A DNA stretch of 63,385 bases, the filler included, from Octopus bimaculoides (Eukaryota): assembly GCF_001194135.2 (NCBI RefSeq). It is 4 parts of 4 records of this genome, joined end to end, with 100 filler letters (N's around TTAATTAATTAA, not from the genome) between each part and the next. Parts side by side here need not be neighbours in the genome. Positions count along the whole stretch, not along the records: positions 21,345 to 46,326 come from NC_069003.1; 3 more parts are not named here. One strand, written 5' to 3'. The number at the start of each line of letters is the position of its first letter. Position 1 is the stretch's first letter. Under the pieces are notes generated by a model. The model was not told the DNA's origin, did no database searches, and was given only the letters and a program-made list of their open reading frames with translations. Below, piece by piece: positions 27,020 through 40,040 of the stretch. Made by a program: the position numbers and the translations under genes.

Positions 27020-27425
27020 GTATGTATTCTTTTATTCTTTTACTTGTTCCAGTCATTTGAATGCGGCCATGCTGGAGCACCACCTTTCGTCGAGCAAATC
27101 AACACCAGGACTTATTCTTTGTAAACCTAGTACTTATTCCATCGGTCCCTTTTGCCGAACCGCTGGTTTACGGGAACGTAAACACACCAACATCGGTTGT
27201 CGAGCATTGGTGAGGAGAAAACACAGACACGTTTCTCTCCTTTCAGGTGAAGAGCGTAGGCTCGAAACGTCAAAGACTTTCTCTATTCCCGAGCGTTAAA
27301 CTAATACATCCATTTGGTCGGCGCAAGGTTATAATAGTAAACACTTGCCCAAGATGCAATACAATGGGACTGAACGCGGAACCGTGTGGTTGGTAAGCAA
27401 GCTACTTACCACATCGCAACTCCCA
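27020..27425 (-). mobile_element. SINE family A with an inserted ~90-bp repeat (27225-27305)
   Basis: Tail at 27035-27225, head at 27340-27425. Confidence 0.75.
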
Positions 27426-28149: not shown

Positions 28150-30148
28150 CTTTTATTACAGCGACCACTAGTGGGTTAATATAGGCTAGATGATTGAGTT
28201 CACACAAGTCACAACGTTTCTCACAAAACACAAAGTCAGAAAATTTTGCAAATAAGCATCAAAAAACGAGAAAATTTTAAAATGAAAATTTAGTGTTTTC
28301 CAGTTGTTTTTCACAATTTTACATACATTTCATATTTGCGACAAGCAAATTTCATTTTGAAATCTAGTGGATTAATATAGGCTAGATAATTGATGATAAG
28401 ATTATATTTATCATATAATGTTTTCATCAACCATCTACTCTATATTAACCCACTAGACTTTANNNNNNNNNNNNNNNNNNNNNNNNNNNNNNNNNNNNNN
28501 NNNNNNNNNNNNNNNNNNNNNNNNNNNNNNNNNNNNNNNNNNNNNNNNNNNNNNNNNNNNNNAGTGTCAACAAACGACTGGAAAACACGAAATTCGCATT
28601 TCCAGATTTTGTTGCTTTTTCATGCTTATTTTCAAAATTTCGTGATTTTGAGTCGTGTGAAAAAGGTTGTCACTTCGGTGAACTCATTGATAAATATAAT
28701 GTTTTCATCAACCATCTAGCCTATATTAACCCACTAGACTTCAAAATGAAAATTGCTTTTCGCTGAAATGTAAACTATCTAAAAGCGTGAAAGAACGACT
28801 GGAAAACACGAAATTCGCATTTCCAGATTTTGTTGCTTTTTCATGCTTATTTTCAAAATTTCGTGATTTTGAGTCGTGTGAAAAAGGTTGTCACTNNNNN
28901 NNNNNNNNNNNNNNNNNNNNNNNNNNNNNNNNNNNNNNNNNNNNNNNNNNNNNNNNNNNNNNNNNNNNNNNNNNNNNNNNNNNNNNNNNNNNNNNNNNNN
29001 NNNNNNNNNNNNNNNNNNNNNNNNNNNNNNNNNNNNNNNNNNNNNNNNNNNNNNNNNNNNNNNNNNNNNNNNNNNNNNNNNNNNNNNNNNNNNNNNNNNN
29101 NNNNNNNNNNNNNNNNNNNNNNNNNNNNNNNNNNNNNNNNNNNNNNNNNNNNNNNNNNNNNNNNNNNNNNNNNNNNNNNNNNNNNNNNNNNNNNNNNNNN
29201 NNNNNNNNNNNNNNNNNNNNNNNNNNNNNNNNNNNNNNNNNNNNNNNNNNNNNNNNNNNNNNNNNNNNNNNNNNNNNNNNNNNNNNNNNNNNNNNNNNNN
29301 NNNNNNNNNNNNNNNNNNNNNNNNNNNNNNNNNNNNNNNNNNNNNNNNNNNNNNNNNNNNNNNNNNNNNNNNNNNNNNNNNNNNNNNNNNNNNNNNNNNN
29401 NNNNNNNNNNNNNNNNNNNNNNNNNNNNNNNNNNNNNNNNNCGTGTGAAAAAGGTTGTCACTTCGGTGAACTCATTGATAAATATAATGTTTTCATCAAC
29501 CATCTAGCCTATATTAACCCACTAGACTTCAAAATGAAAATTGCTTTTCGCTGAAATGTAAACTATCTAAAAGCGTGAAAGAACGACTGGAAAACACGAA
29601 ATTCTCATTTTTTAATTTTGTCGTTTTTTTTTATTACATCTATTAGATTTGAAAACGGAAAGTGTTTCTTGGAAAAATGAAAAGCATCGTAATGTGTTAA
29701 AAAAACACTAAATTTTCATTTTCAAAAGTTTCCTTGTTTTTCATGCTTGTTTGCAATATTTTGTGACTTTCTGTTTTGCCACAAATTTTGTGATTACAGT
29801 GAACTCTTTGATAAATATATCATCTCCTGAATCATCTAACTAATATTAACCCATTAGATTTCATAACGAAGCGTGTTTCTTGCAAAAATGAAAAGTATCT
29901 TAATGTGTGAAAAAACACGAAAAAGGCACTTAATTTTCATTTTCAAAAGTTTCCTGTTTTTCATGCTTATTTGCAATATTTTGTGACTTTCTCTTTTGCC
30001 ACAAATTTTTTGATTTTAGTGAACTCTTTGATAAATATAATCTTCTCATCAATCATCTAACTTAGATTTCAAAACGAAAAGTGTTTCGTGCAAAAATGAA
30101 AAGTATCGTAATGTGTGAAAACACGAAAAATACTCGAAATTTTCATTT
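28150..30148. repeat. ~221-bp tandem satellite with an inverted left arm and diverged right-hand units
   Basis: cgtgtgaaaaagg recurs at 28654 and 28875 (221-bp period); diverged units at 29600-30148; orientation flips at about 28410. Confidence 0.88.
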
Positions 30149-30879: not shown

Positions 30880-31072
30880 TATATTGTAGAAATTTTATTT
30901 GTGCAATTGTAAATAATGAAAGTAAATTAGCTAGATTTTACAATTTTTATGTGTAAAATTTGTAGTGACCCCTGGCAGTCAAGCAAGAAAGCAAAAGGTA
31001 AAAGGGATCTAACGAGAGTAATCTCCCTCAACCTTCTCGAAAATTCTCAGATACTCTAGAAATTTTCAATTA

Positions 31073-31123
31073 ACTTCCGGATGACGTGGAAGTCAGGGAC
31101 TTCGGGTTCATCCCTTATATAAA
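31073..31123 (+). promoter_or_regulatory. LTR promoter: ETS-CRE-ETS cluster and TATA box
   Basis: ACTTCCGG-A-TGACGT-GGAAGT at 31073-31093; TATATAAA at 31116-31123; AATAAA at about 31307. Confidence 0.6.
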
Positions 31124-33115
31124 GCGAACGCAATTCTAATTTTGCTCTCCTTTTGCCTGTCGGTTCCTAGGCGTACGCATTGAGCCACGCCAGTCCCCCC
31201 CCCCACGCGCGCATATTCGCCTCATTTGCTTTGAGACATGTGGCTGCAAAGTATGTTACAAGCTTCTTTCAAACCATTCTTATATGTTAACGCATTACAT
31301 CCAGTAATAAATATGTTATGACTTATGAACGTCTCGCAAGTCCTTATTTTTCTTGTCGTTTTACGCACAAGATGGTGACCCCTCTTTCTCGCATGCAATT
31401 GTAAAATTATTGGTTGTCACATCACTACGAAATGGTAACTCCGACGTTAGAATACGATAGCCGCTACAAAATAGTGAACCTGACATTTGGATACACTAGC
31501 CACTATAAAATGTTGACTCCGAGTTAAGGGTTTGCTGCTTTGCTTTCACATGCAATGTTGTTACTACATAATGGCGAACTTGACGCAACCCACAGTACAA
31601 GGTAAACCGACGCCATACTACACTCTTCAAGGTAATTTCTACATTACTCTACCAGAACCTTTGATATTCTAGTTCTAAAATAATTTCGTGTCTTCCACGT
31701 TAAAGAAGAAAGTCCACTGATCACGCCTGTTCTTTGTCATAAACGATTGTGTCTCTGTTCAACTGAACAAGCATACCCGTGAACATCCTGAGCTCCGATG
31801 GAAAAGCGTGTCATAATCATGAGAAACACTTCCATACCAGCTTATTCTGGCAATGCTAAGCTTTCGTTTGCACAGTTTGATTCTTACTTCACAACACATG
31901 GTATACAAGCCGCTAAACAAAAGCTACACGTGCTTATTAGTGGCATTCCCGCCATTTTAGCAGACACCGTTAAAGATATCATCACAGATCGTCCACAAAG
32001 CATGACCTACGATTCTGTGCGAACAGAAGAACTACACAGAAATTCTAAATCATCAGAAAGCCGATTCTGTGCATTACAAGAGGAGAACCTGGGTGACAGA
32101 ACTCCTTCGGAATTTCTTAGGCGGATCCGAGAACTCAGTGATGATACACCTGAGAACAGCTTCTTCATTAAAAAATATTTTTTTCCCCGCTTACCAACTA
32201 TGTACAGACAATATTGGCGAATATGGTTGACACCAGTTCTATAGACCAAATCGCTTCATCTGCAGATAGAATAATGAAATTTTCTCACAGACCCACCGCG
32301 GCTGATTTAGTTATTGCTTCAACGTCTTCTCAACAAAAGCATGATACTAAAAATGGATACGCCATGTTGAAGGCTATCGATGGTTTAACGTGCCAAATAG
32401 CTAAATTCTGTTGTATTAGATGGCGTTCGCGAAGCCGGTCTTTCTCTTCTCAACGACGCAACAGTTTTTCAGTCAACAATTCTTCGGTATGTTGGTACGA
32501 CAAGGCACGTCATTGTAACAAGCCTTGTGCTTTTGAAGTGTCGGAAAACTGAACCTAGAGAGCCTGGGCACGTCAGACCTCTCTCACAACTTTTCAGCTA
32601 ATTGTGCTTTTTTCATTAGGGACCTAGTACAAACAGGTTGTTCATGGTCGATACAGGATCAAGTTGCAGTATTTTGTCATTTCGGTTCAGCTCTAACAAG
32701 CCACAGTTATCCAGTATTTCCTTATACGCGGTGAACCATTCTCCCATCAAAACCTATGGTCAGATATCTTAAACTCTAGCCCTTGCCTCGCGTTGAGATT
32801 TTAAATGGATTTTTGTCATCGCCGACCTGCCTCATCCTACTCTCGGGGCGGACTTCTTACACCACTTTTCACTCCTGGTAGATGTCAGAAAACAGAGACT
32901 TGTGGATATTACCACATCTTTATCTATGCCTGCACGCGAATCTACCGCTACTAGCCTCAGCCCATCGTTTTTGGAGCTGCTNNNNNNNNNNNNNNNNNNN
33001 NNNNNNNNNNNNNNNNNNNNNNNNNNNNNNNNNNNNNNNNNNNNNNNNNNNNNNNNNNNNNNNNNNNNNNNNNNNNNNNNNNNNNNNNNNNNNNNNNNNN
33101 NNNNNNNNNNNNNNN

Positions 33116-33212
33116 CCATACTCTTCTTGCCTCGTTTCCAATTTGAACTTGCTGCCTCTTGAAGTGACATCTTTTCCCTTTACTTCGAGTCCCTCATTCT
33201 TCCTCATTTAAG
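33116..33212 (-). mobile_element. Fragment of a second-family LTR nested inside the CsRn1-like element
   Basis: Reverse complement ..aggaagaatgagggact..gatgtcacttcaagaggcagcaagttcaaa matches the LTR at 36750-36825. Confidence 0.75.
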
Positions 33213-34068
33213 CCTACCCAGACAGTCCACTCGACTCAACATTTTATTACAACAACTGGTCCACGTAAACTAGCGCCAGACAGGCTCAAGAAAGCCCGCG
33301 CTGAATTCGAGCACATGCTCCAGCTCGGTCTTATACGTCCTTCTACAAGCCCTTGGGCATCTCCGCTACATTTAGCTCGAAAGGGTGAAGCAGATTTTAG
33401 ACCCGTTGGTGATTACAGGAGACTTAATGCTATCACCACGCCCGATCATTATCCTCTACCCAACTTAACGGATTTCTCTTATGTTCTCCATGGTTGCTTT
33501 ATATTTTCCAAAGTGGATCTGATACGTGCGTACCACCAAATCCCGATGAACCCGGAAGATATACCCAAAATTGCCGTAACTACCCCGTTTGGTTCATTCG
33601 AATTCCTGTCTATGTCTTTTGGCCTGAGAAATGCTGCCAGTACATTCCAGCGCTCCATCGACGAAGTCGTACGCATTCAATTTTGTTTTTGCTTTCCTGC
33701 TTGACCGCCAGGGGCCACTACAAATTCACAAATAGTAAATAATAAAAATAAATTAACTATACTGTAGAATTTTTTTCTGTACAATTCATAAATTGTAATT
33801 AATGTAAACACTAACTATACTGTAGAATTTGTATGTATACGTAGTTAAAATATAAATAATGGAAATGTGTATTCTACCCTAGAATTCTTTTCCGAAAACA
33901 GATTAGCTATATTGCAGAAGCTTTTTCTGTACAATACTTAAATTCTAAATAATGAAAACAAATGAACTATATGGGAGGATTTTTATCTGTAGATTTCACA
34001 AGTTGTAAATTATGAAAAGAAATTAAGTATAAGGTAGAATTTTTATCCTTACGTATTGAAATTGCGAA

Positions 34069-37000
34069 TTATTATGGAGGAAGGGGACAGGAAGAATGAG
34101 GAACCCAAAACGAGGGGAAATGTCATCACTTCAGGTTCAAAATAAACTCTTTCTTGCAAGTGTGTTGTGAGTAACAGACGTGTGTTGGGAACAATCTAAG
34201 GGTAGTAGTTCTTTCTGTCCAGATCTTAGGCACATGGATACTACAGTTACGTTTTGCTGATTCCTATTAGCGGATGCTTAGAGGGACCGTTGCCTATTGC
34301 ATCTTGAGGTAAGAGCAACCTTTATTTTGCATTACAACTACAAGCTATTTTGGCATGCAGTTTACCAGTTGTGAAGATTTTTAAAATGTTTTTTCACTTT
34401 TTGCTCCTGCCATTCCAACCGCCGACACTTGCAATGGCTACAAAAATCAGAATCAGTAGCGATGTATTGAGATCGTTTGCTGGGGAAGGTGAAGTGGTGG
34501 CCCGGATAAAAAATTTGAAACTCGTGGTGAAGCTGCAGAGTATTAAAGATGTGGCTAGCCGCATGCCACTTTACCTAGAAGGTGGTGTACTAAATCTGTA
34601 CTCAAAAATGGATGAAGCAGAGCAGGTGAAAGTGGAGAAAATTAAAGAGCATCTGAATGATGCGCACATGGAAGGGATATTCAAAGCCTACAGCAAGCTT
34701 GGGAGAGTGAGATGGATGTGCAAGCAAGTAGACAAAGCGGTAGGCAGTAGCCAGCGATAGCTAGCAAGTGGCACCAGTGATAAGACAAATGGCTAAGGGA
34801 TCATGCTAAGGGTGTTGGGGTTCACACATGGATGCATGGAACTGAAATCTGTGCTGGTGTCTTACTGATGTTTCTAACCTGGGCAAATTAATGTAAACAG
34901 GCAAATGAAGAGAGAAGAATTACTGTGCCACTAGTTCCCTCCATGGTGGGGGCAAGGGAAGCACAAGCCCTTGTGGATACAGTTGCACAGCAACCCTGGT
35001 GACTGCAAGAATGGTCGAGAGATGGAGAGGAAGCTCCAGCCTCAGTGTGGTAAATGGTAAGTAGGTCATGTGCAAGAGTATCAGTGAAGTGGAACTAGAG
35101 GTACAGAGGCTGGTGTTAATGCTGCAGGTGATTGTAGTTGATGAGGAGGTGGACGGTGTCAACATTGTAGTCGGTATGGATGTGATTGTATGTTTGGGTG
35201 GTGTGAAATTTAGTGACTGGTGCACCATGTCCTGTGAGAGTGGAGCAGAGGACGAAGGCTATAGGAGCGACAGGTTACCATCAGTGAGAGAGGATGCCAT
35301 AGGTGCAATTGAAGATAAAGATTTCTGTGCTGAATTTGACAGCAAAAGATGGACAGTGAATTACTTCTGGAAAGAACCCCCAACCCATACTGAGAAAGAG
35401 GGTGAGTTGCTATGAACATAGCTTGAAAGGAGAAAAGAGGATTGAGTTTAGGAGACATGTGGACAGATGGATACAAGAGGACATTTTGATACTATGGCGT
35501 GAGGAAGTGATGAGCAGTATGCTGTTGATGATGGCTGTAGTTCAGCCAACAAAGAATAAAGCTTGACTGGTGCTGGACTTTTGAGAGTTGAATGGACATG
35601 TGCTTCGTTAGTATGGTTAGAACATTTGCCTTATTCTTTTCTGACGACACGAAGACCAAGTGCAGCTTCAGACTAAACTGTGCAGCTAGGTCCCTTAGAA
35701 TTCCCAGGTGATACTTAATCACTGTTTTCATGGCACTTTGTGCGGATCCTCATCTGGTTGGTGATCACCGATGCCACACACTCCAGCACCATGGCAGAAT
35801 TGGTCTGAATCTCAACAACTTCTGGTCCCCATCTCAGAGCTAGGCTCACATCCTTTAACACAGCATCCAGTTCAACTACATTGATTTGGTTGTAGTCATC
35901 CTTCTTCCTGAGCTACACTGCATCTTCCACTTCAATACTCCTATTTCCAGATCGATATACTCTCAATGCTATACTACTCATGTCACACCATATGATCCCT
36001 TTTTTGTATCAGCCATATACCAGATGCCCTTCACCAGATCTTCTACTCACATTCTCTCCAAGACATCTTGCATCATTGAAATCATCTTTTTTTTCACTTT
36101 ATAATTTCAATTCAGTCCTTTTGCTCACGTTTTGATGTAGCTACAGGCCATTTGGAGCCATCTTGGGACCACTAGCTTCCTACACATCAAGAACAGCCCT
36201 CTCCTATTCATATCTCTGTGAAACACAAGCCTACCCACTTTATTTCTTTTGAACCTGAGCTCCAGCATCATGCCTCCTTATATGGCTTCTGGTGGTTTTG
36301 TTGTTAATCCAAAGGTTGTTAATCCAAACCTTTGAAGATGATTCACAATTTCCTCTGCCAATACCATACTCTCATCCACCAGGTTGTCATCAATATATGA
36401 GTTAGTAACCTGCTCCACTTTGGTCTATTTTCCAAAAACCACCTTGAGAATCTTTGCCATGATTTTCAGTGCTGAACACAGGCCAAAACCCAGTTGAGTT
36501 AGACAAAACGTTCTGCCTTTATATCTCACTAGCTGGTACCTCCACAACTTCTCAGATACATGGAGTGCAAATAGGCCGACTTGAGGTTGACGACTGTAGA
36601 TGCTCTCATCATTTGCCTCCACTCCCACAGGGTTTCCCCTCATACATCCTTGTAACCCTGCAAAAATTTCAAAGGGAATGTCTTCACCCCCTCCCCTGAT
36701 GGCTGAACGTTTTCAAAATAGAATAGAAGAGCAAGGTGTATCATGTGAAAGAAATGAGCAGGAAGAACGAGGGACTGGAAAAAAAAGGGAAAGGACGTCA
36801 CTTCAAGAGGCAGCAAATTCAAAACAGCCTCTTTCTCACAAGTGTGTTGGGAATGATCTGAGAGTAGTGGAGCTTGGGTGTAGGACACATGTGCATACTA
36901 CTGTTAAGTTTTGCTAGTTCCCATGACCTTACACTTGACAGGACTGTTGCCTATTGCATCTTGAGGTAAGAGCAACCTTTATTTGTGCCTTACAATTACA
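34069..37000 (+). mobile_element. Second Gypsy-like LTR retroelement with an internal inversion and no integrase
   Basis: LTRs at about 34069-34342 and 36737-37000; purine tract at 36720-36736; plus strand gag, protease LVDT, RT start AVVQPTKNK..VLDF; minus strand 35610-36680 RT (LKSAY, TQLGFG, SYIDD) and RNase H (SEKNKANVLT). Confidence 0.8.
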
Positions 37001-38479: not shown

Positions 38480-38797
38480 TATCGAAGAATATTTACCTGT
38501 AAATAGATAAAAATTGTAACAAAAACAAATATACTAAATTGTAGAGATTTAGTTGCTTTGTTTTTATTATGCTGTTCTTAAATTCTAAATAATTAAAACA
38601 AATTAACTATATTGTGGAATTTTATCTGTACTTAGTTAAATTGTAAATGATGAAAACAAATTGACTATACTGTAGAATTTATTTCCTGTACATAAAGAAG
38701 AGATTAACTATATTGTAGAATTCTTATCTATACCTAGTATATTGTAGAATTTTTATGTGTACAGTTCATAGATTATAAAATACATTACCTATACTCT

Positions 38798-39014
38798 TTT
38801 ACTCTCTCTTTTACTTGTTTCAGTTATTTGACTGCGGCCATGCTGAAGCACCGCCTTTAGTCGAGCAAATCGACCCCAGGACTTATTCTTTGTAAGCCTA
38901 GTTCTTATTCTATCGGTCTCCTTTGCCGAACTGCTAAGTTACGGGTACGTAAACACACCAGCATTGGCTGTCAAGTGATGTTGGGAGGACAAACACAGAC
39001 ACACAAACAAACAA

Positions 39015-39045
<31 letters not shown>

Positions 39046-39219
39046 CATATACATGACGGGCTTCTTTCAGTTTCCGTCTACTAAATCCACTCACAAGGCT
39101 TTTGGTCGGCCCGAGGCTATAGTAGAAGACATTTGCCCAAGGTGCCACGCAGTGGGACTGAACCCGGAACCATGTGGTTGGTAAGCAAGCTACTTACCAT
39201 ACAGCCACTCCTGCGCCTG
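38798..39219 (-). mobile_element. SINE family A, near-intact
   Basis: Reverse complement of the 17858 copy. Confidence 0.9.
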
Positions 39220-39504: not shown

Positions 39505-40040
39505 TTTTCTTTATTGACCACAAAGGCCAAACACAAAACAAATACGGACAATACAACACAAGGGACAAATAGTGTTTGAAACCATACCGTGGATAAAATA
39601 AATAACAACAATTAAAATTCTTCAAAAGGGGAAAGTTCTTCTCAGGGATAACCAAGGAACACCACACATATTGGTTACTTCGACCTCCAGGGGCACCTCT
39701 CTCCTTCTCAACCTTTTCGGTTTACAAGGTAAAGTTCAGAGTAGGCACATTCTTACAGACCATCCTCACCACGTTCACCCACCTTTCAGTAAAAGTACTT
39801 CCCTCTCCATCTCCAGTTTCCTTTTCAAATGGAACTTGAAAAAGGTGATGTGGGCATGGTCAAAGTGGAAGGTATCTGTTTTCAATCCTTTCAATCTCAT
39901 CTACTACACTACTTCCTTTGCCAAAGCCATCAGACAGAGGAAAACTACCTTTCCTTCCCAGTCAAAAGAAAGTGACAGGATAATCTTCATGATGGACTTG
40001 GCTGAAAACTGGATCTGTCCTACATGCATCAACAGCTGTT
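39505..40040 (-). mobile_element. Tx1/L1-clade LINE 3' fragment
   Basis: VGQIQFSAKSIM..GKVVFLCLMALAKEVV..RLKGLKT..FFKFHLKRKL resembles the ORF2 end at 56650-56980; AATAAA and A-rich end at about 39505. Confidence 0.75.

What the first reader, a model, noticed from the sequence alone, without database searches (positions are those of the whole stretch)
31364..31620. Tandem array of LTR-end + tRNA-Trp primer-binding-site units in a Gypsy leader
Seen: instead of one PBS there are about six degenerate repeats of (c)actacaaaa-TGGTGACCCCGACGT, starting at about 31364, 31423, 31462, 31501, 31562 and 31596, separated by partly unique spacers (two units are exactly 39 bp). CACTACA is the inverted complement of the LTR start TGTAGTG. 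Known: TGGTGACCCCGACGTGATTTGAACACGCAACC is complementary to the 3' end of eukaryotic tRNA-Trp, and CsRn1-clade elements prime on tRNA-Trp. Units 2, 3 and 5 resemble this beyond the usual 18 nt (ttggatacac, gacgcaacc). Inference: a repeat-spacer array built by repeated capture of the LTR end plus read-through tRNA copy. It could provide back-up priming or integration ends, act as a sponge for 3' tRNA fragments, or record replication cycles. I cannot verify whether this has been described.
Basis: partly seen in the sequence, partly recalled or inferred. Interest (0 to 1): 0.8.

Follow-up and report, generated by a model that had tools for sequence, protein, structure and literature searches.

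The report
Tandem tRNA-Trp primer-site array in retrotransposon
A decayed octopus-type Gypsy retrotransposon carries, where a single tRNA primer-binding site is expected, a row of five or six repeats of "LTR end plus tRNA-Trp copy"; the same layout occurs in sister copies and, in fresh form, in unrelated elements, so it looks like a recurring and apparently undescribed scar of faulty reverse transcription.

Summary
Window 31363-31625 holds six degenerate units. Four match the 25-nt consensus (LTR end + tRNA-Trp PBS) within 7 mismatches, against 0.001 expected (0/2000 shuffles).

It is not a local duplication. Three other copies of the family (Octopus bimaculoides x2, O. vulgaris x1) carry the same array with fewer units.

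The O. vulgaris copy has a 3' LTR end. It places the LTR end at CACTAYA (window 31429). Unit 1 therefore lies inside U5, unit 2 (31433) is the real PBS, and units 3-6 are leader copies.

Units 1-5 align to the tRNA-Trp complement better than shuffles. Units 2 and 3 do so past the usual 18 nt.

A metagenome scan found young arrays of the same design, with exact 18-35-nt tRNA-Trp copies each followed by a short LTR-end tag. At least two of these families are CsRn1-like.

Best reading: scars of aberrant plus-strand transfer, that is tRNA over-extension past A58 plus template switching, later changed by unit-register recombination. The proposed functions (back-up priming, tRF sponge) remain untested.

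I found no published description. The nearest concepts are the primer over-extension sequence, the multipartite PBSs of Ty1/Ty3/Gypsy, and the Culex cqgypsy_1 tRNA dimer.

The parts
30957..30960 (+). Left target-site duplication AATT
   Evidence: AATT also follows the right end at 33723-33726. The two flanks are contiguous in register within a 60-bp satellite unit.
30961..31429 (+). 5' LTR (469 bp), TGTAGTG...CACTACG. TATA box at 31116, AATAAA at 31306.
   Evidence: The start aligns with the 3' LTR start of L001 (after PPT gaggagggag) and with the 5' LTR of L009. The end is fixed by the L009 3' LTR, which stops at ...ATCACTATA and is then followed by flank. The related element L007 ends ...CCGCTATAA|at|TGGTGACCCCGA.
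31363..31422 (+). Unit 1, inside U5 of the LTR: LTR-end-like ACGCACAAGA + TGGTGACCCC (31373-31382) + a 40-nt tail
   Evidence: Present in both LTRs of L009. In L009 it reads GTACAAAATGGTGACCCC. The 10-nt match to tRNA-Trp is reached by 8/2000 shuffles. Predicted duplex with the tRNA-Trp 3' half is -29.4 kcal/mol.
31423..31461 (+). Unit 2 (39 nt): LTR end CACTACG, spacer AAA (31430-31432), true PBS TGGTAACTCCGACGT (31433-31447), T-arm-like extension TAGAATACGATAGC
   Evidence: First unit after the LTR end. 13/15 identical to tRNA-Trp here and 14/15 in L001, L002 and L009. The alignment reaches tRNA-complement position 27 (1/2000 shuffles). It has the strongest predicted duplex, -35.6 kcal/mol.
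31462..31500 (+). Unit 3 (39 nt): CGCTACAAAA + TAGTGAACCTGACAT + TTGGATACACTAGC
   Evidence: Orthologous unit in L009, L001 and L002. In L009 it aligns to tRNA-complement positions 3-32 with 23 identities (0/2000 shuffles).
31501..31561 (+). Unit 4 (61 nt): CACTATAAAA + TGTTGACTCCGAGTT + a tail that resembles the tail of unit 1
   Evidence: Absent from L009, L001 and L002. The tail CTTTCACATGCAATGTTGT resembles unit-1 CTTTCTCGCATGCAATTGT. 19/2000 shuffles reach its score.
31562..31590 (+). Unit 5 (29 nt): TACTACATAA + TGGCGAAC + TTGACGCAACC
   Evidence: The end ACGCAACC is an exact 8-mer of the tRNA-Trp T-stem/variable-loop complement, running to tRNA position 45. The L009 unit 3 looks like the head of window unit 3 joined to the tail of unit 5.
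31591..31625 (+). Unit 6: CACAGTACAA + GGTAAACCGACGC, with no T-arm extension. Probably the oldest, original PBS.
   Evidence: Conserved in all four copies. L003 and L005 carry PBS-like sites at the aligned position. Not significant against tRNA-Trp on its own.
31626..31797 (+). Rest of the 5' leader
   Evidence: 88-90% identical to L001, L002 and L009, which is better conserved than the array.
31798..32549 (+). gag, frameshifted near 32230. Remnant of the CHCC knuckle at 32490-32528.
   Evidence: Pfam DUF7041, E=6e-10. 81% identical to O. bimaculoides P0001, whose knuckle is CWYHAHFHDKARHCNTPC = CX2HX9CX3C.
32638..32981 (+). Protease region (..MVDTGSS.., ..LGADFLHHF..), with stop codons, running into an N gap at 32982-33115
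   Evidence: Frame translation.
33315..33671 (+). N-terminal part of reverse transcriptase, cut off
   Evidence: Pfam RVT_1, E=2e-11.
33681..33722 (-). Inverted copy of the first 42 nt of the LTR. It forms the right terminus ...CACTACA.
   Evidence: The reverse complement aligns with 30961-31002 and with the L001 3' LTR start. It is followed by AATT.

Best explanation
The region is the U5/PBS/leader junction of an old, broken CsRn1-clade Gypsy retrotransposon of an octopod.

Its primer-binding module has been multiplied in tandem. The module consists of the last ~10 nt of the LTR, a 3-nt spacer, and a ~30-nt complement of the 3' part of tRNA-Trp (acceptor strand plus T arm).

Shown:
- The array belongs to the family, not to this locus.
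- Unit number differs between copies (5 units after the LTR here, about 3.5 and 3 elsewhere).
- The LTR ends at unit 2's CACTAYA. Unit 2 was therefore the priming site in the last replication cycles, and unit 1 is a module now carried inside U5.
- Young arrays of the same design exist in other tRNA-Trp-primed elements, with exact tRNA copies running past position 58 to positions 53, 45 or 42.

Inferred mechanism:
1. During plus-strand strong-stop synthesis, reverse transcriptase sometimes reads past m1A58 into the T arm of the primer tRNA.
2. Such an over-extended end is then joined to a minus strand that has run a few nucleotides into U5, through a mis-registered or end-to-end template switch.
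3. This places a fresh [PBS + over-extension] unit next to the LTR and pushes the older PBS, now tagged with an LTR end, downstream.
4. Repetition of this event, together with unit-register template switching or unequal recombination, gives arrays of variable length that decay with distance from the LTR.
5. Priming from a downstream unit moves the LTR boundary and swallows upstream units into U5. Unit 1 would be such a case.

The extra units are most likely tolerated by-products. The best ones still have a predicted affinity for tRNA-Trp and could act as alternative priming sites.
For: Family trait:
- L001 and L002 (O. bimaculoides) and L009 (O. vulgaris) share U1, U2, U3 and U6 in the same order. 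Unit number in between varies.

LTR end:
- The L009 3' LTR contains U1 and stops at CACTATA.
- L007 has an LTR pair ending CCGCTA(T/A)AA, followed by its PBS.

tRNA origin:
- U1-U5 beat shuffles, and U2 and U3 reach tRNA-complement positions 25-32 in every copy.
- Every unit keeps the complement of the post-transcriptional CCA, or a one-base variant of it.

Young arrays:
- L022/L049: 3 x (24-nt exact copy + 3 nt + 12-nt LTR end).
- L017/L055: an exact 32-nt copy.
- L041: a 34-nt copy.
- L074: copies of 35 and 30 nt.
- L026 and L032: 4 and 3 units of 27 nt.
- L017/L055 and L047 have a DUF7041-type gag just downstream, and L017/L055 also have RT.

Polarity:
- In L017, L019, L041 and L036 the unit farthest from the LTR has no over-extension. 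In L019, L041 and L036 it continues into a leader conserved between those families, while the LTR-proximal units carry the long tRNA copies.
- Window U6 likewise lacks the extension and is the unit shared with the L003 and L005 families.

Background knowledge:
- Over-extension past m1A58 to positions 55, 54 or 37 and a 'primer over-extension sequence' downstream of the PBS are established for retroviruses (PMC13191261).

Other:
- The array RNA is not unusually structured (z = 0 to +1.3).
- Predicted duplexes with the tRNA-Trp 3' half are -19 to -36 kcal/mol for the window units, against a background mean of -11.9 and minimum of -21.2 (for folding, for duplexes).
Against: - The generating mechanism is inferred from end products only. 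No replication intermediates were seen.
- A tandem array has no defined phase, so the unit boundaries (tRNA position ~45 | LTR end) are informative only at the array edges and in the young arrays.
- Some units carry material the simple model does not predict. The tail of window U4 resembles U5 sequence from U1, and unit 2 of L019/L041 includes about 25 nt of leader. Extra template switches or unequal recombination are needed to explain these.
- In L017 the LTR-proximal unit is more decayed than the second unit.
- Only one copy of the octopus family has a usable 3' LTR end.
- The metagenome hits were found with a pattern that requires two units, so their frequency among tRNA-Trp elements is unknown. 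About 48 of the 62 hits are expected by chance, and many are bacterial coding repeats.
- All family copies have TGGTAAC, with A at PBS position 5, where other octopus families have TGGTGAC. This is odd if the PBS is refreshed from a canonical tRNA-Trp.
Confidence: 0.6

Rival explanations
1. Plain host-side tandem duplication. Replication slippage or unequal crossing-over duplicated a ~40-bp stretch that happens to include the PBS, in the master copy or after insertion. Reverse transcription played no role and the array has no consequence.
For: - Unit number varies in unit register between copies. The L009 unit 3 looks like the head of window U3 joined to the tail of U5.
- The array is the least conserved part of the leader: 74-82% identity against 88-90%.
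- Tandem repeats in Gypsy 5' UTRs are common (PMC3286476).
Against: - The same design recurs at exactly the LTR/PBS junction in DNA-unrelated families: L011 minus strand, L003 and more than ten metagenome families.
- Young units carry exact tRNA copies of different lengths (18, 24, 32, 34, 35 nt) ending in short fill-ins and LTR-end tags. This needs fresh copying of the tRNA, not duplication of genomic sequence.
- Orthologous units sit at different loci and in different species, so most duplications predate insertion.
Confidence: 0.2
2. A selected, working multi-site primer platform. Several tRNA-Trp docking sites, each with its own LTR-end (integrase) motif, would raise priming efficiency or give back-up initiation and integration ends. 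The T-arm complement would act as a primer over-extension or extended-PBS element, as in Ty1, Ty3 or lentiviruses.
For: - Three to four units per copy keep predicted duplexes with the tRNA-Trp 3' half at or beyond the background minimum of -21.2 (-22.6 to -41 kcal/mol).
- A T-arm-like box follows the PBS even in single-PBS relatives. Examples: L010 GAACACTCAA, L007 TTCTGAATTACGAAAC, L008.
- Every unit has an att-like CACTAYA in front of it.
- The array RNA is unstructured and so accessible.
- Unit 1 inside U5 shows that the priming site has not always been the first module.
Against: - Downstream units carry changes at the positions that pair with the tRNA's CCA end (TAG, TGT), shared by all copies. 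This argues that they were not used and refreshed.
- Unit number is not conserved.
- Close relatives do well with one PBS. L010 has 98.2% identical LTRs.
- There are no functional data.
Confidence: 0.13
3. A decoy (sponge) for 3' tRNA-Trp fragments that would otherwise block the real PBS or trigger silencing.
For: Several sites are complementary to the 18-nt 3' fragment, with predicted duplexes of -15 to -22 kcal/mol for U1-U4. Targeting of PBSs by 3' tRFs is known (cited through PMC12471100, ref. 42).
Against: - No small-RNA data are available.
- The units are mismatched in the part of the site facing the tRF's 3' end.
- The decayed state and variable number argue against selection.
- A decoy placed in cis would also attract silencing to the same transcript.
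Confidence: 0.03
4. Protein-binding or structural leader repeats (insulator- or enhancer-like as in Drosophila gypsy, or a packaging or dimerisation structure) that resemble the PBS only by descent.
For: Tandem repeats in the gypsy 5' UTR act as an insulator (PMC3286476).
Against: - No Rfam match.
- Folding energies are no better than shuffles.
- What is conserved in the units is the tRNA complement and the LTR end, not a separate motif.
Confidence: 0.03

Closest known systems
CsRn1 clade of Ty3/Gypsy LTR retrotransposons (CsRn1, PwRn1, AgCR; PMC2582038)
   Same: tRNA-Trp PBS, CHCC gag knuckle CX2HX9CX3C, 4-bp target duplication, and LTR ends of the TGT...A(A/T/C)A type. The nearest RT relatives include flatworm elements.
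   Different: The described members have a single PBS of about 12 nt. No tandem PBS modules are reported in that paper.
Primer over-extension sequence of lentiviruses and spumaviruses (PMC13191261)
   Same: Sequence directly downstream of the PBS that matches the primer tRNA beyond position 58. It is explained by plus-strand strong-stop DNA reading past m1A58.
   Different: In those viruses it spans a few nucleotides (to positions 55/54) and is present once. Here it spans up to 14-17 nt (to positions 45-42) and is repeated together with the PBS and an LTR-end tag.
Multipartite or bipartite PBSs of Ty1, Ty3 and Drosophila Gypsy, and the U5-TpsiC contact of avian retroviruses (PMC1635307; PMC13191261)
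   Same: Genomic RNA pairs with parts of the primer tRNA other than its 3' 18 nt, including the T arm.
   Different: Those extra sites lie apart from the PBS (in U5, further into the leader, or at the 3' end of the genome) and each occurs once. Here the complement is contiguous with the PBS and the whole module is reiterated. Binding was not tested.
Culex cqgypsy_1 atypical PBS (PMC3286476)
   Same: Reverse-transcribed mature tRNA sequence (with CCA) sits at the LTR/PBS junction, flanked by a direct duplication of the LTR end (26 nt).
   Different: That case is one event with two whole tRNAs (Lys, Glu) head to head in an Osvaldo-lineage element, interpreted as a SINE-like insertion. Here the copies are partial, come from the priming tRNA itself, and form arrays.
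Tandem repeats in Gypsy 5' UTRs (for example the gypsy insulator, and Mag-like cqgypsy_24/25/66)
   Same: A tandem array located in the leader just downstream of the PBS.
   Different: Those repeats are not PBS or tRNA derived, and they do not span the LTR boundary.

Membership tests
CsRn1 clade (Ty3/Gypsy) | PBS complementary to the 3' end of tRNA-Trp | tested here: met
   The first site after the LTR is TGGTAACTCCGACGT, 13/15 identical. In L001, L002 and L009 it is 14/15.
CsRn1 clade (Ty3/Gypsy) | Gag with a CHCC knuckle, CX2HX9CX3C, instead of CCHC | tested here: met
   The sister copy P0001 (81% identical gag) has CWYHAHFHDKARHCNTPC. The window copy keeps a deleted remnant, CWYDKARHCNKPC, at 32490-32528.
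CsRn1 clade (Ty3/Gypsy) | 4-bp target-site duplication | tested here: met
   AATT on both sides in the window. AGCT in L007. GACG/GACA in L009.
CsRn1 clade (Ty3/Gypsy) | RT groups with CsRn1-like elements in a phylogeny | tested here: inconclusive
   The best RT hits (46-61% identity) include Sparganum, Spirometra, Schistosoma and Trichobilharzia elements. No tree with reference clades was built.
Primer over-extension sequence | Sequence immediately 3' of the 18-nt PBS that is complementary to the primer tRNA 5' of position 58 | tested here: met
   Exact in L017 (32 nt), L022 (24 nt), L041 (34 nt) and L074 (35 nt). Degenerate but above shuffles in the octopus units U2 and U3. As a free search in the window alone it is not significant.
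Multipartite PBS (Ty1/Ty3/Gypsy type) | Demonstrated annealing of the primer tRNA to additional, separate genomic sites that affects cDNA synthesis | not testable with these tools
   Only predicted duplex energies are available.
Gypsy-type leader insulator repeats | Reiterated protein-binding motif unrelated to the PBS | tested here: not met
   The conserved parts of the units are the LTR end and the tRNA complement. No separate motif was seen.
Known structured RNA families | Match to an Rfam model, or folding better than shuffles | tested here: not met
   No Rfam match up to E=10. Folding z-scores are 0 to +1.3, and -0.5 for L003.

The most novel reading that the evidence does not exclude
PBS-module arrays would be growth rings of reverse-transcription errors. 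Each unit records one cycle in which RT read through m1A58 of tRNA-Trp and then switched templates, with new units added on the LTR side. Priming from a downstream unit would then feed old PBS modules into U5, so that LTR ends of tRNA-Trp-primed Gypsy elements grow by swallowing former primer sites. If so, the arrays are a natural in-vivo readout of primer-tRNA modification state and of strand-transfer fidelity across animal lineages.
Probability: 0.35. Interest if true: 0.75.

Novelty: new variant of a known kind. Interest (0 to 1): 0.6.

Why it matters
LTR elements are described in textbooks and by annotation software (LTRharvest/LTRdigest-type tools) as having one PBS directly after the 5' LTR. 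Tandem PBS modules that straddle the LTR boundary have several consequences:

- They would mislead LTR-end calling.
- They give genomic evidence that plus-strand strong-stop DNA can copy a primer tRNA far beyond position 58 in invertebrates.
- They suggest a simple way in which U5 and the leader evolve.
- They offer natural material for studying second-strand-transfer errors and alternative priming.

The window copy itself is dead and has no consequence for its host.

Tried and rejected
- TRF does not report the array.
- A stringent local-alignment test with a low score threshold was uninformative. It was replaced by Hamming and per-unit tests.
- PBS-like hits at 39662 and 45708 in the piece show no element features.
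- No tRNA gene lies in the piece or in the first six loci, L001-L006. The octopus tRNA-Trp could therefore not be compared.
- An LTR end before unit 1 (..CGCACAaga|TGGTGACCCC) was my first reading. It was rejected on the L009 3' LTR.
- The 3' LTR of L001 is truncated after about 150 nt, and L002 is 5'-truncated.
- The L005/L006 upstream region gave no clear LTR boundary.
- The pol protein search returned no further octopus copies.
- The identity of the L011 minus-strand element could not be confirmed because of a nested insertion and an N gap.
- Most metagenome hits are chance matches or bacterial Gly-Asp-Pro-Asp-type coding repeats.
- Several array-bearing contigs have no recognisable gag or pol downstream.
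- Literature searches for multiple, tandem or duplicated PBSs found no description of such arrays.
Full report
**What is in the window**

The piece is cephalopod DNA. The gag ORF at 31798-32241 is 81% identical to an Octopus bimaculoides protein with Pfam DUF7041.

The element spans 30961-33722 and consists of:
- a 469-bp LTR, TGTAGTG...CACTACG, with TATA at 31116 and AATAAA at 31306;
- the array;
- a leader;
- a frameshifted gag with a damaged CHCC knuckle;
- a protease region with stop codons that runs into an N gap;
- the first ~120 codons of RT.

It sits in a 60-bp satellite with a 4-bp duplication, AATT. Its right terminus is an inverted copy of the first 42 nt of the LTR.

**Observation check**

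Six units can be read: U1 31363, U2 31423, U3 31462, U4 31501, U5 31562, U6 31591. U2 and U3 are exactly 39 nt.

Against the 25-nt consensus (CACTACAAAA + 15 nt of the tRNA-Trp complement), U2-U5 have 3-7 mismatches and U1 has 9. Nothing else in the 25-kb piece comes within 8 mismatches.

In 2000 dinucleotide shuffles of the region, no shuffle reached the observed counts for the 25-mer, the 15-mer PBS or the 10-mer LTR end.

The tRNA-Trp complement was checked against a published human tRNA-Trp template. U1-U5 each align to it better than their own shuffles. U6 does not.

**Is it a family feature?**

Protein look-ups gave three further copies of the same family:
- L001 and L002 from O. bimaculoides;
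- L009 from O. vulgaris.

These are 77-90% identical to the window copy over the aligned stretches (74.5% over the array stretch in L002).

All three carry U1, U2, U3 and U6 in the same order. The middle of the array differs:
- the window has U3-U4-U5;
- L009 has one hybrid unit (head of window U3 plus tail of U5);
- L001 and L002 have a 14-nt partial unit plus one full unit.

Unit number changes in unit register.

**Where the LTR ends**

L009 keeps the end of its 3' LTR. That LTR contains U1 (TGGTGACCCCTCTTTC...) and stops at ...GACAATCACTATA, followed by flank. The duplication is GACG/GACA.

A related element with an intact LTR pair (L007, TSD AGCT) ends ...CCGCTA(T/A)AA. Two bases later comes TGGTGACCCCGA.

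By homology:
- the window LTR ends at 31429;
- AAA is the spacer;
- U2 (31433) is the true PBS;
- U1 is a module lying inside U5;
- U3-U6 lie in the leader.

The PwRn1 paper gives the CsRn1-clade traits as a tRNA-Trp PBS, CX2HX9CX3C, a 4-bp TSD and TGT...AAA/ATA ends. These fit.

**The copy beyond 18 nt**

In the window alone, a free search for the T-arm complement is not significant (316/1000 shuffles). Taken unit by unit, however, U2 and U3 align to tRNA-complement positions 1-27 and 3-26. In L009, L001 and L002 the alignments reach positions 25-32 with 17-26 identities, and 0-3 of 2000 shuffles reach those scores.

Single-PBS relatives also have a T-arm-like box a few bases after the PBS:
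- L010 GAACACTCAA;
- L007 TTCTGAATTACGAAAC;
- L008.

This corresponds to the 'primer over-extension sequence' known from lentiviruses and spumaviruses. There, plus-strand strong-stop DNA sometimes passes m1A58 (PMC13191261).

**The same design elsewhere**

Two further cephalopod-side cases were found:
- On the minus strand of L011 (O. bimaculoides) there is a DNA-unrelated array of four PBS-like 12-mers spaced 42, 22 and 41 nt. Each is preceded by an LTR-end-like (C)ATTACA(T)T (0/1000 shuffles).
- A more distant gag relative from a Logan assembly (L003) has at least two modules.

A metagenome scan for two PBS-like sites 20-45 nt apart returned 62 loci, about the number expected by chance. Many are bacterial coding repeats.

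About fifteen, however, are clear young arrays directly after an LTR-like end:
- L022/L049: three units of 38-39 nt, each a 24-nt exact tRNA-Trp copy, 3 nt, and 12 nt of LTR end.
- L017/L055: an exact 32-nt copy, then CCCCAGATATAT and a second PBS.
- L041: a 34-nt copy.
- L074: copies of 35 and 30 nt.
- L026 and L032: 4 and 3 units of 27 nt.
- L030, L036, L054 and L057: similar arrays.

L017/L055 have a DUF7041-type gag just downstream of the array, followed by RT and integrase, and L017 has an LTR pair whose 3' member ends exactly before the first unit (L055 shows no LTR pair). L047 has the same kind of gag.

The source organisms of these contigs are not known to me.

**Mechanism**

A unit has the same make-up as the 3' end of an over-extended plus-strand strong-stop DNA: U5 end, spacer, PBS, then further tRNA copy.

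In L017, L019, L041 and L036 the unit farthest from the LTR lacks the over-extension. In L019, L041 and L036 it runs into a leader shared between those families. The units next to the LTR carry the long, fresh tRNA copies. Window U6 behaves in the same way.

This polarity, the differing lengths of the tRNA copies, the short fill-ins at the junctions and the LTR-end tags all fit repeated aberrant second-strand transfers that add units on the LTR side. Later gain and loss would occur by unit-register switching.

Because U5 is copied from whatever lies upstream of the site actually used for priming, use of a downstream unit moves the LTR end. This gives a direct explanation for U1 sitting in both LTRs of L009.

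All of this is inference from end products. Some units contain U5 or leader material that needs further events to explain.

**Function**

The array RNA folds no better than shuffles and matches no Rfam family.

Predicted duplexes with the tRNA-Trp 3' half, in kcal/mol:

| Unit | Duplex |
|---|---|
| U1 | -29.4 |
| U2 | -35.6 |
| U3 | -29.3 |
| U4 | -22.6 |
| U5 | -18.8 |
| U6 | -18.6 |
| Background | mean -11.9, minimum -21.2 |

Three or four sites could therefore still bind the tRNA. Against a selected role:
- the downstream units carry shared changes opposite the tRNA's CCA end;
- unit number is not conserved;
- the array is the least conserved part of the leader.

I rate 'tolerated by-product with possible alternative priming' above a selected function. 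The tRF-sponge idea is unsupported.

**Novelty**

Searches of the held literature found none of the following described: tandem, multiple or duplicated PBSs in LTR retrotransposons or octopus elements.

The nearest published items are:
- the primer over-extension sequence;
- the multipartite PBSs of Ty1, Ty3 and Gypsy;
- the Culex cqgypsy_1 element, which has reverse-transcribed tRNAs at the PBS flanked by a 26-nt LTR-end duplication.

I therefore class the array as a new variant of a known kind. The window copy is an old, degenerate example of it.

Noticed in passing
window 33681-33726 with 30957-31002: The element is a truncated copy whose right terminus is the reverse complement of the LTR's first 42 nt (about 37/42). 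It is flanked on both sides by AATT, and the satellite flanks are in register. This indicates one integration of an aberrant cDNA. It could arise if the growing plus strand switched onto the 5' end of another plus-strand DNA and ran off. The inverted U3 start would then mimic a U5 end for integrase.
   Followed up: partly
L011 14917-15022, minus strand (O. bimaculoides CM046624.1): A second array, unrelated at the DNA level, of four PBS-like 12-mers spaced 42, 22 and 41 nt. Each is preceded by an LTR-end-like motif, and the array lies downstream of an AATAAA-bearing LTR-like stretch. It is cut by a nested young element (LTRs 9143-9425 and 14456-14738, 98.6% identical). The host element could not be identified because of an N gap.
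   Followed up: partly
L071 (whole contig), L075 1-290; also L021 and L031: Metagenome contigs with long satellites built from the tRNA-Trp PBS motif. L071/L075 have a 16/32-nt unit TGGTGACYCCGRTATW in about 48 copies. L021 has 21-nt units. L031 has six 27-nt units of 13 nt + TGGTGACCCCGACG. Whether these derive from retroelement PBS modules or are coincidental is unknown.
   Followed up: no
window 31433-31439; L001 5799, L002 7337, L009 9367, L003 58: All copies of the family, and L003, read TGGTAAC (A at PBS position 5). Other octopus CsRn1-like families read TGGTGAC (L010, L012, L011 plus strand, L013). This suggests either a tRNA-Trp isodecoder with U72 or a PBS that is not refreshed from the primer.
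   Followed up: no
window 30880-30960, 33727-34080, 38560-38790: A 60-bp AT-rich satellite (consensus GAAAACAAATTAACTATATGGCAGAATTTTTATCTGTACAATACACAAATTCTAAATAAT). It is the insertion target of the element.
   Followed up: partly
window 27036-27423 and 38807-39211; 34235-34327 and 36892-36984; 28564-30148: Two pairs of direct repeats: one 84% identical and 11.77 kb apart, the other 82% identical and 2.66 kb apart. There is also a ~220-bp tandem repeat upstream of the element. These may be LTRs or other repeats of further elements and were not examined.
   Followed up: no
L017 last ~40 nt of both LTRs; L019 just upstream of its first unit: The U5 ends of the insect-type elements (..CCAACACAACCCTGCAGTACCTCCATA..) resemble the tail of an array unit, that is the end of the T-arm complement plus the LTR-end tag. 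L019 has a decayed ..GACGTGATATTAACATGCAACCTTCAGTACCTCCACTTATAAT in front of its first PBS. This hints that U5 ends contain swallowed PBS modules.
   Followed up: no
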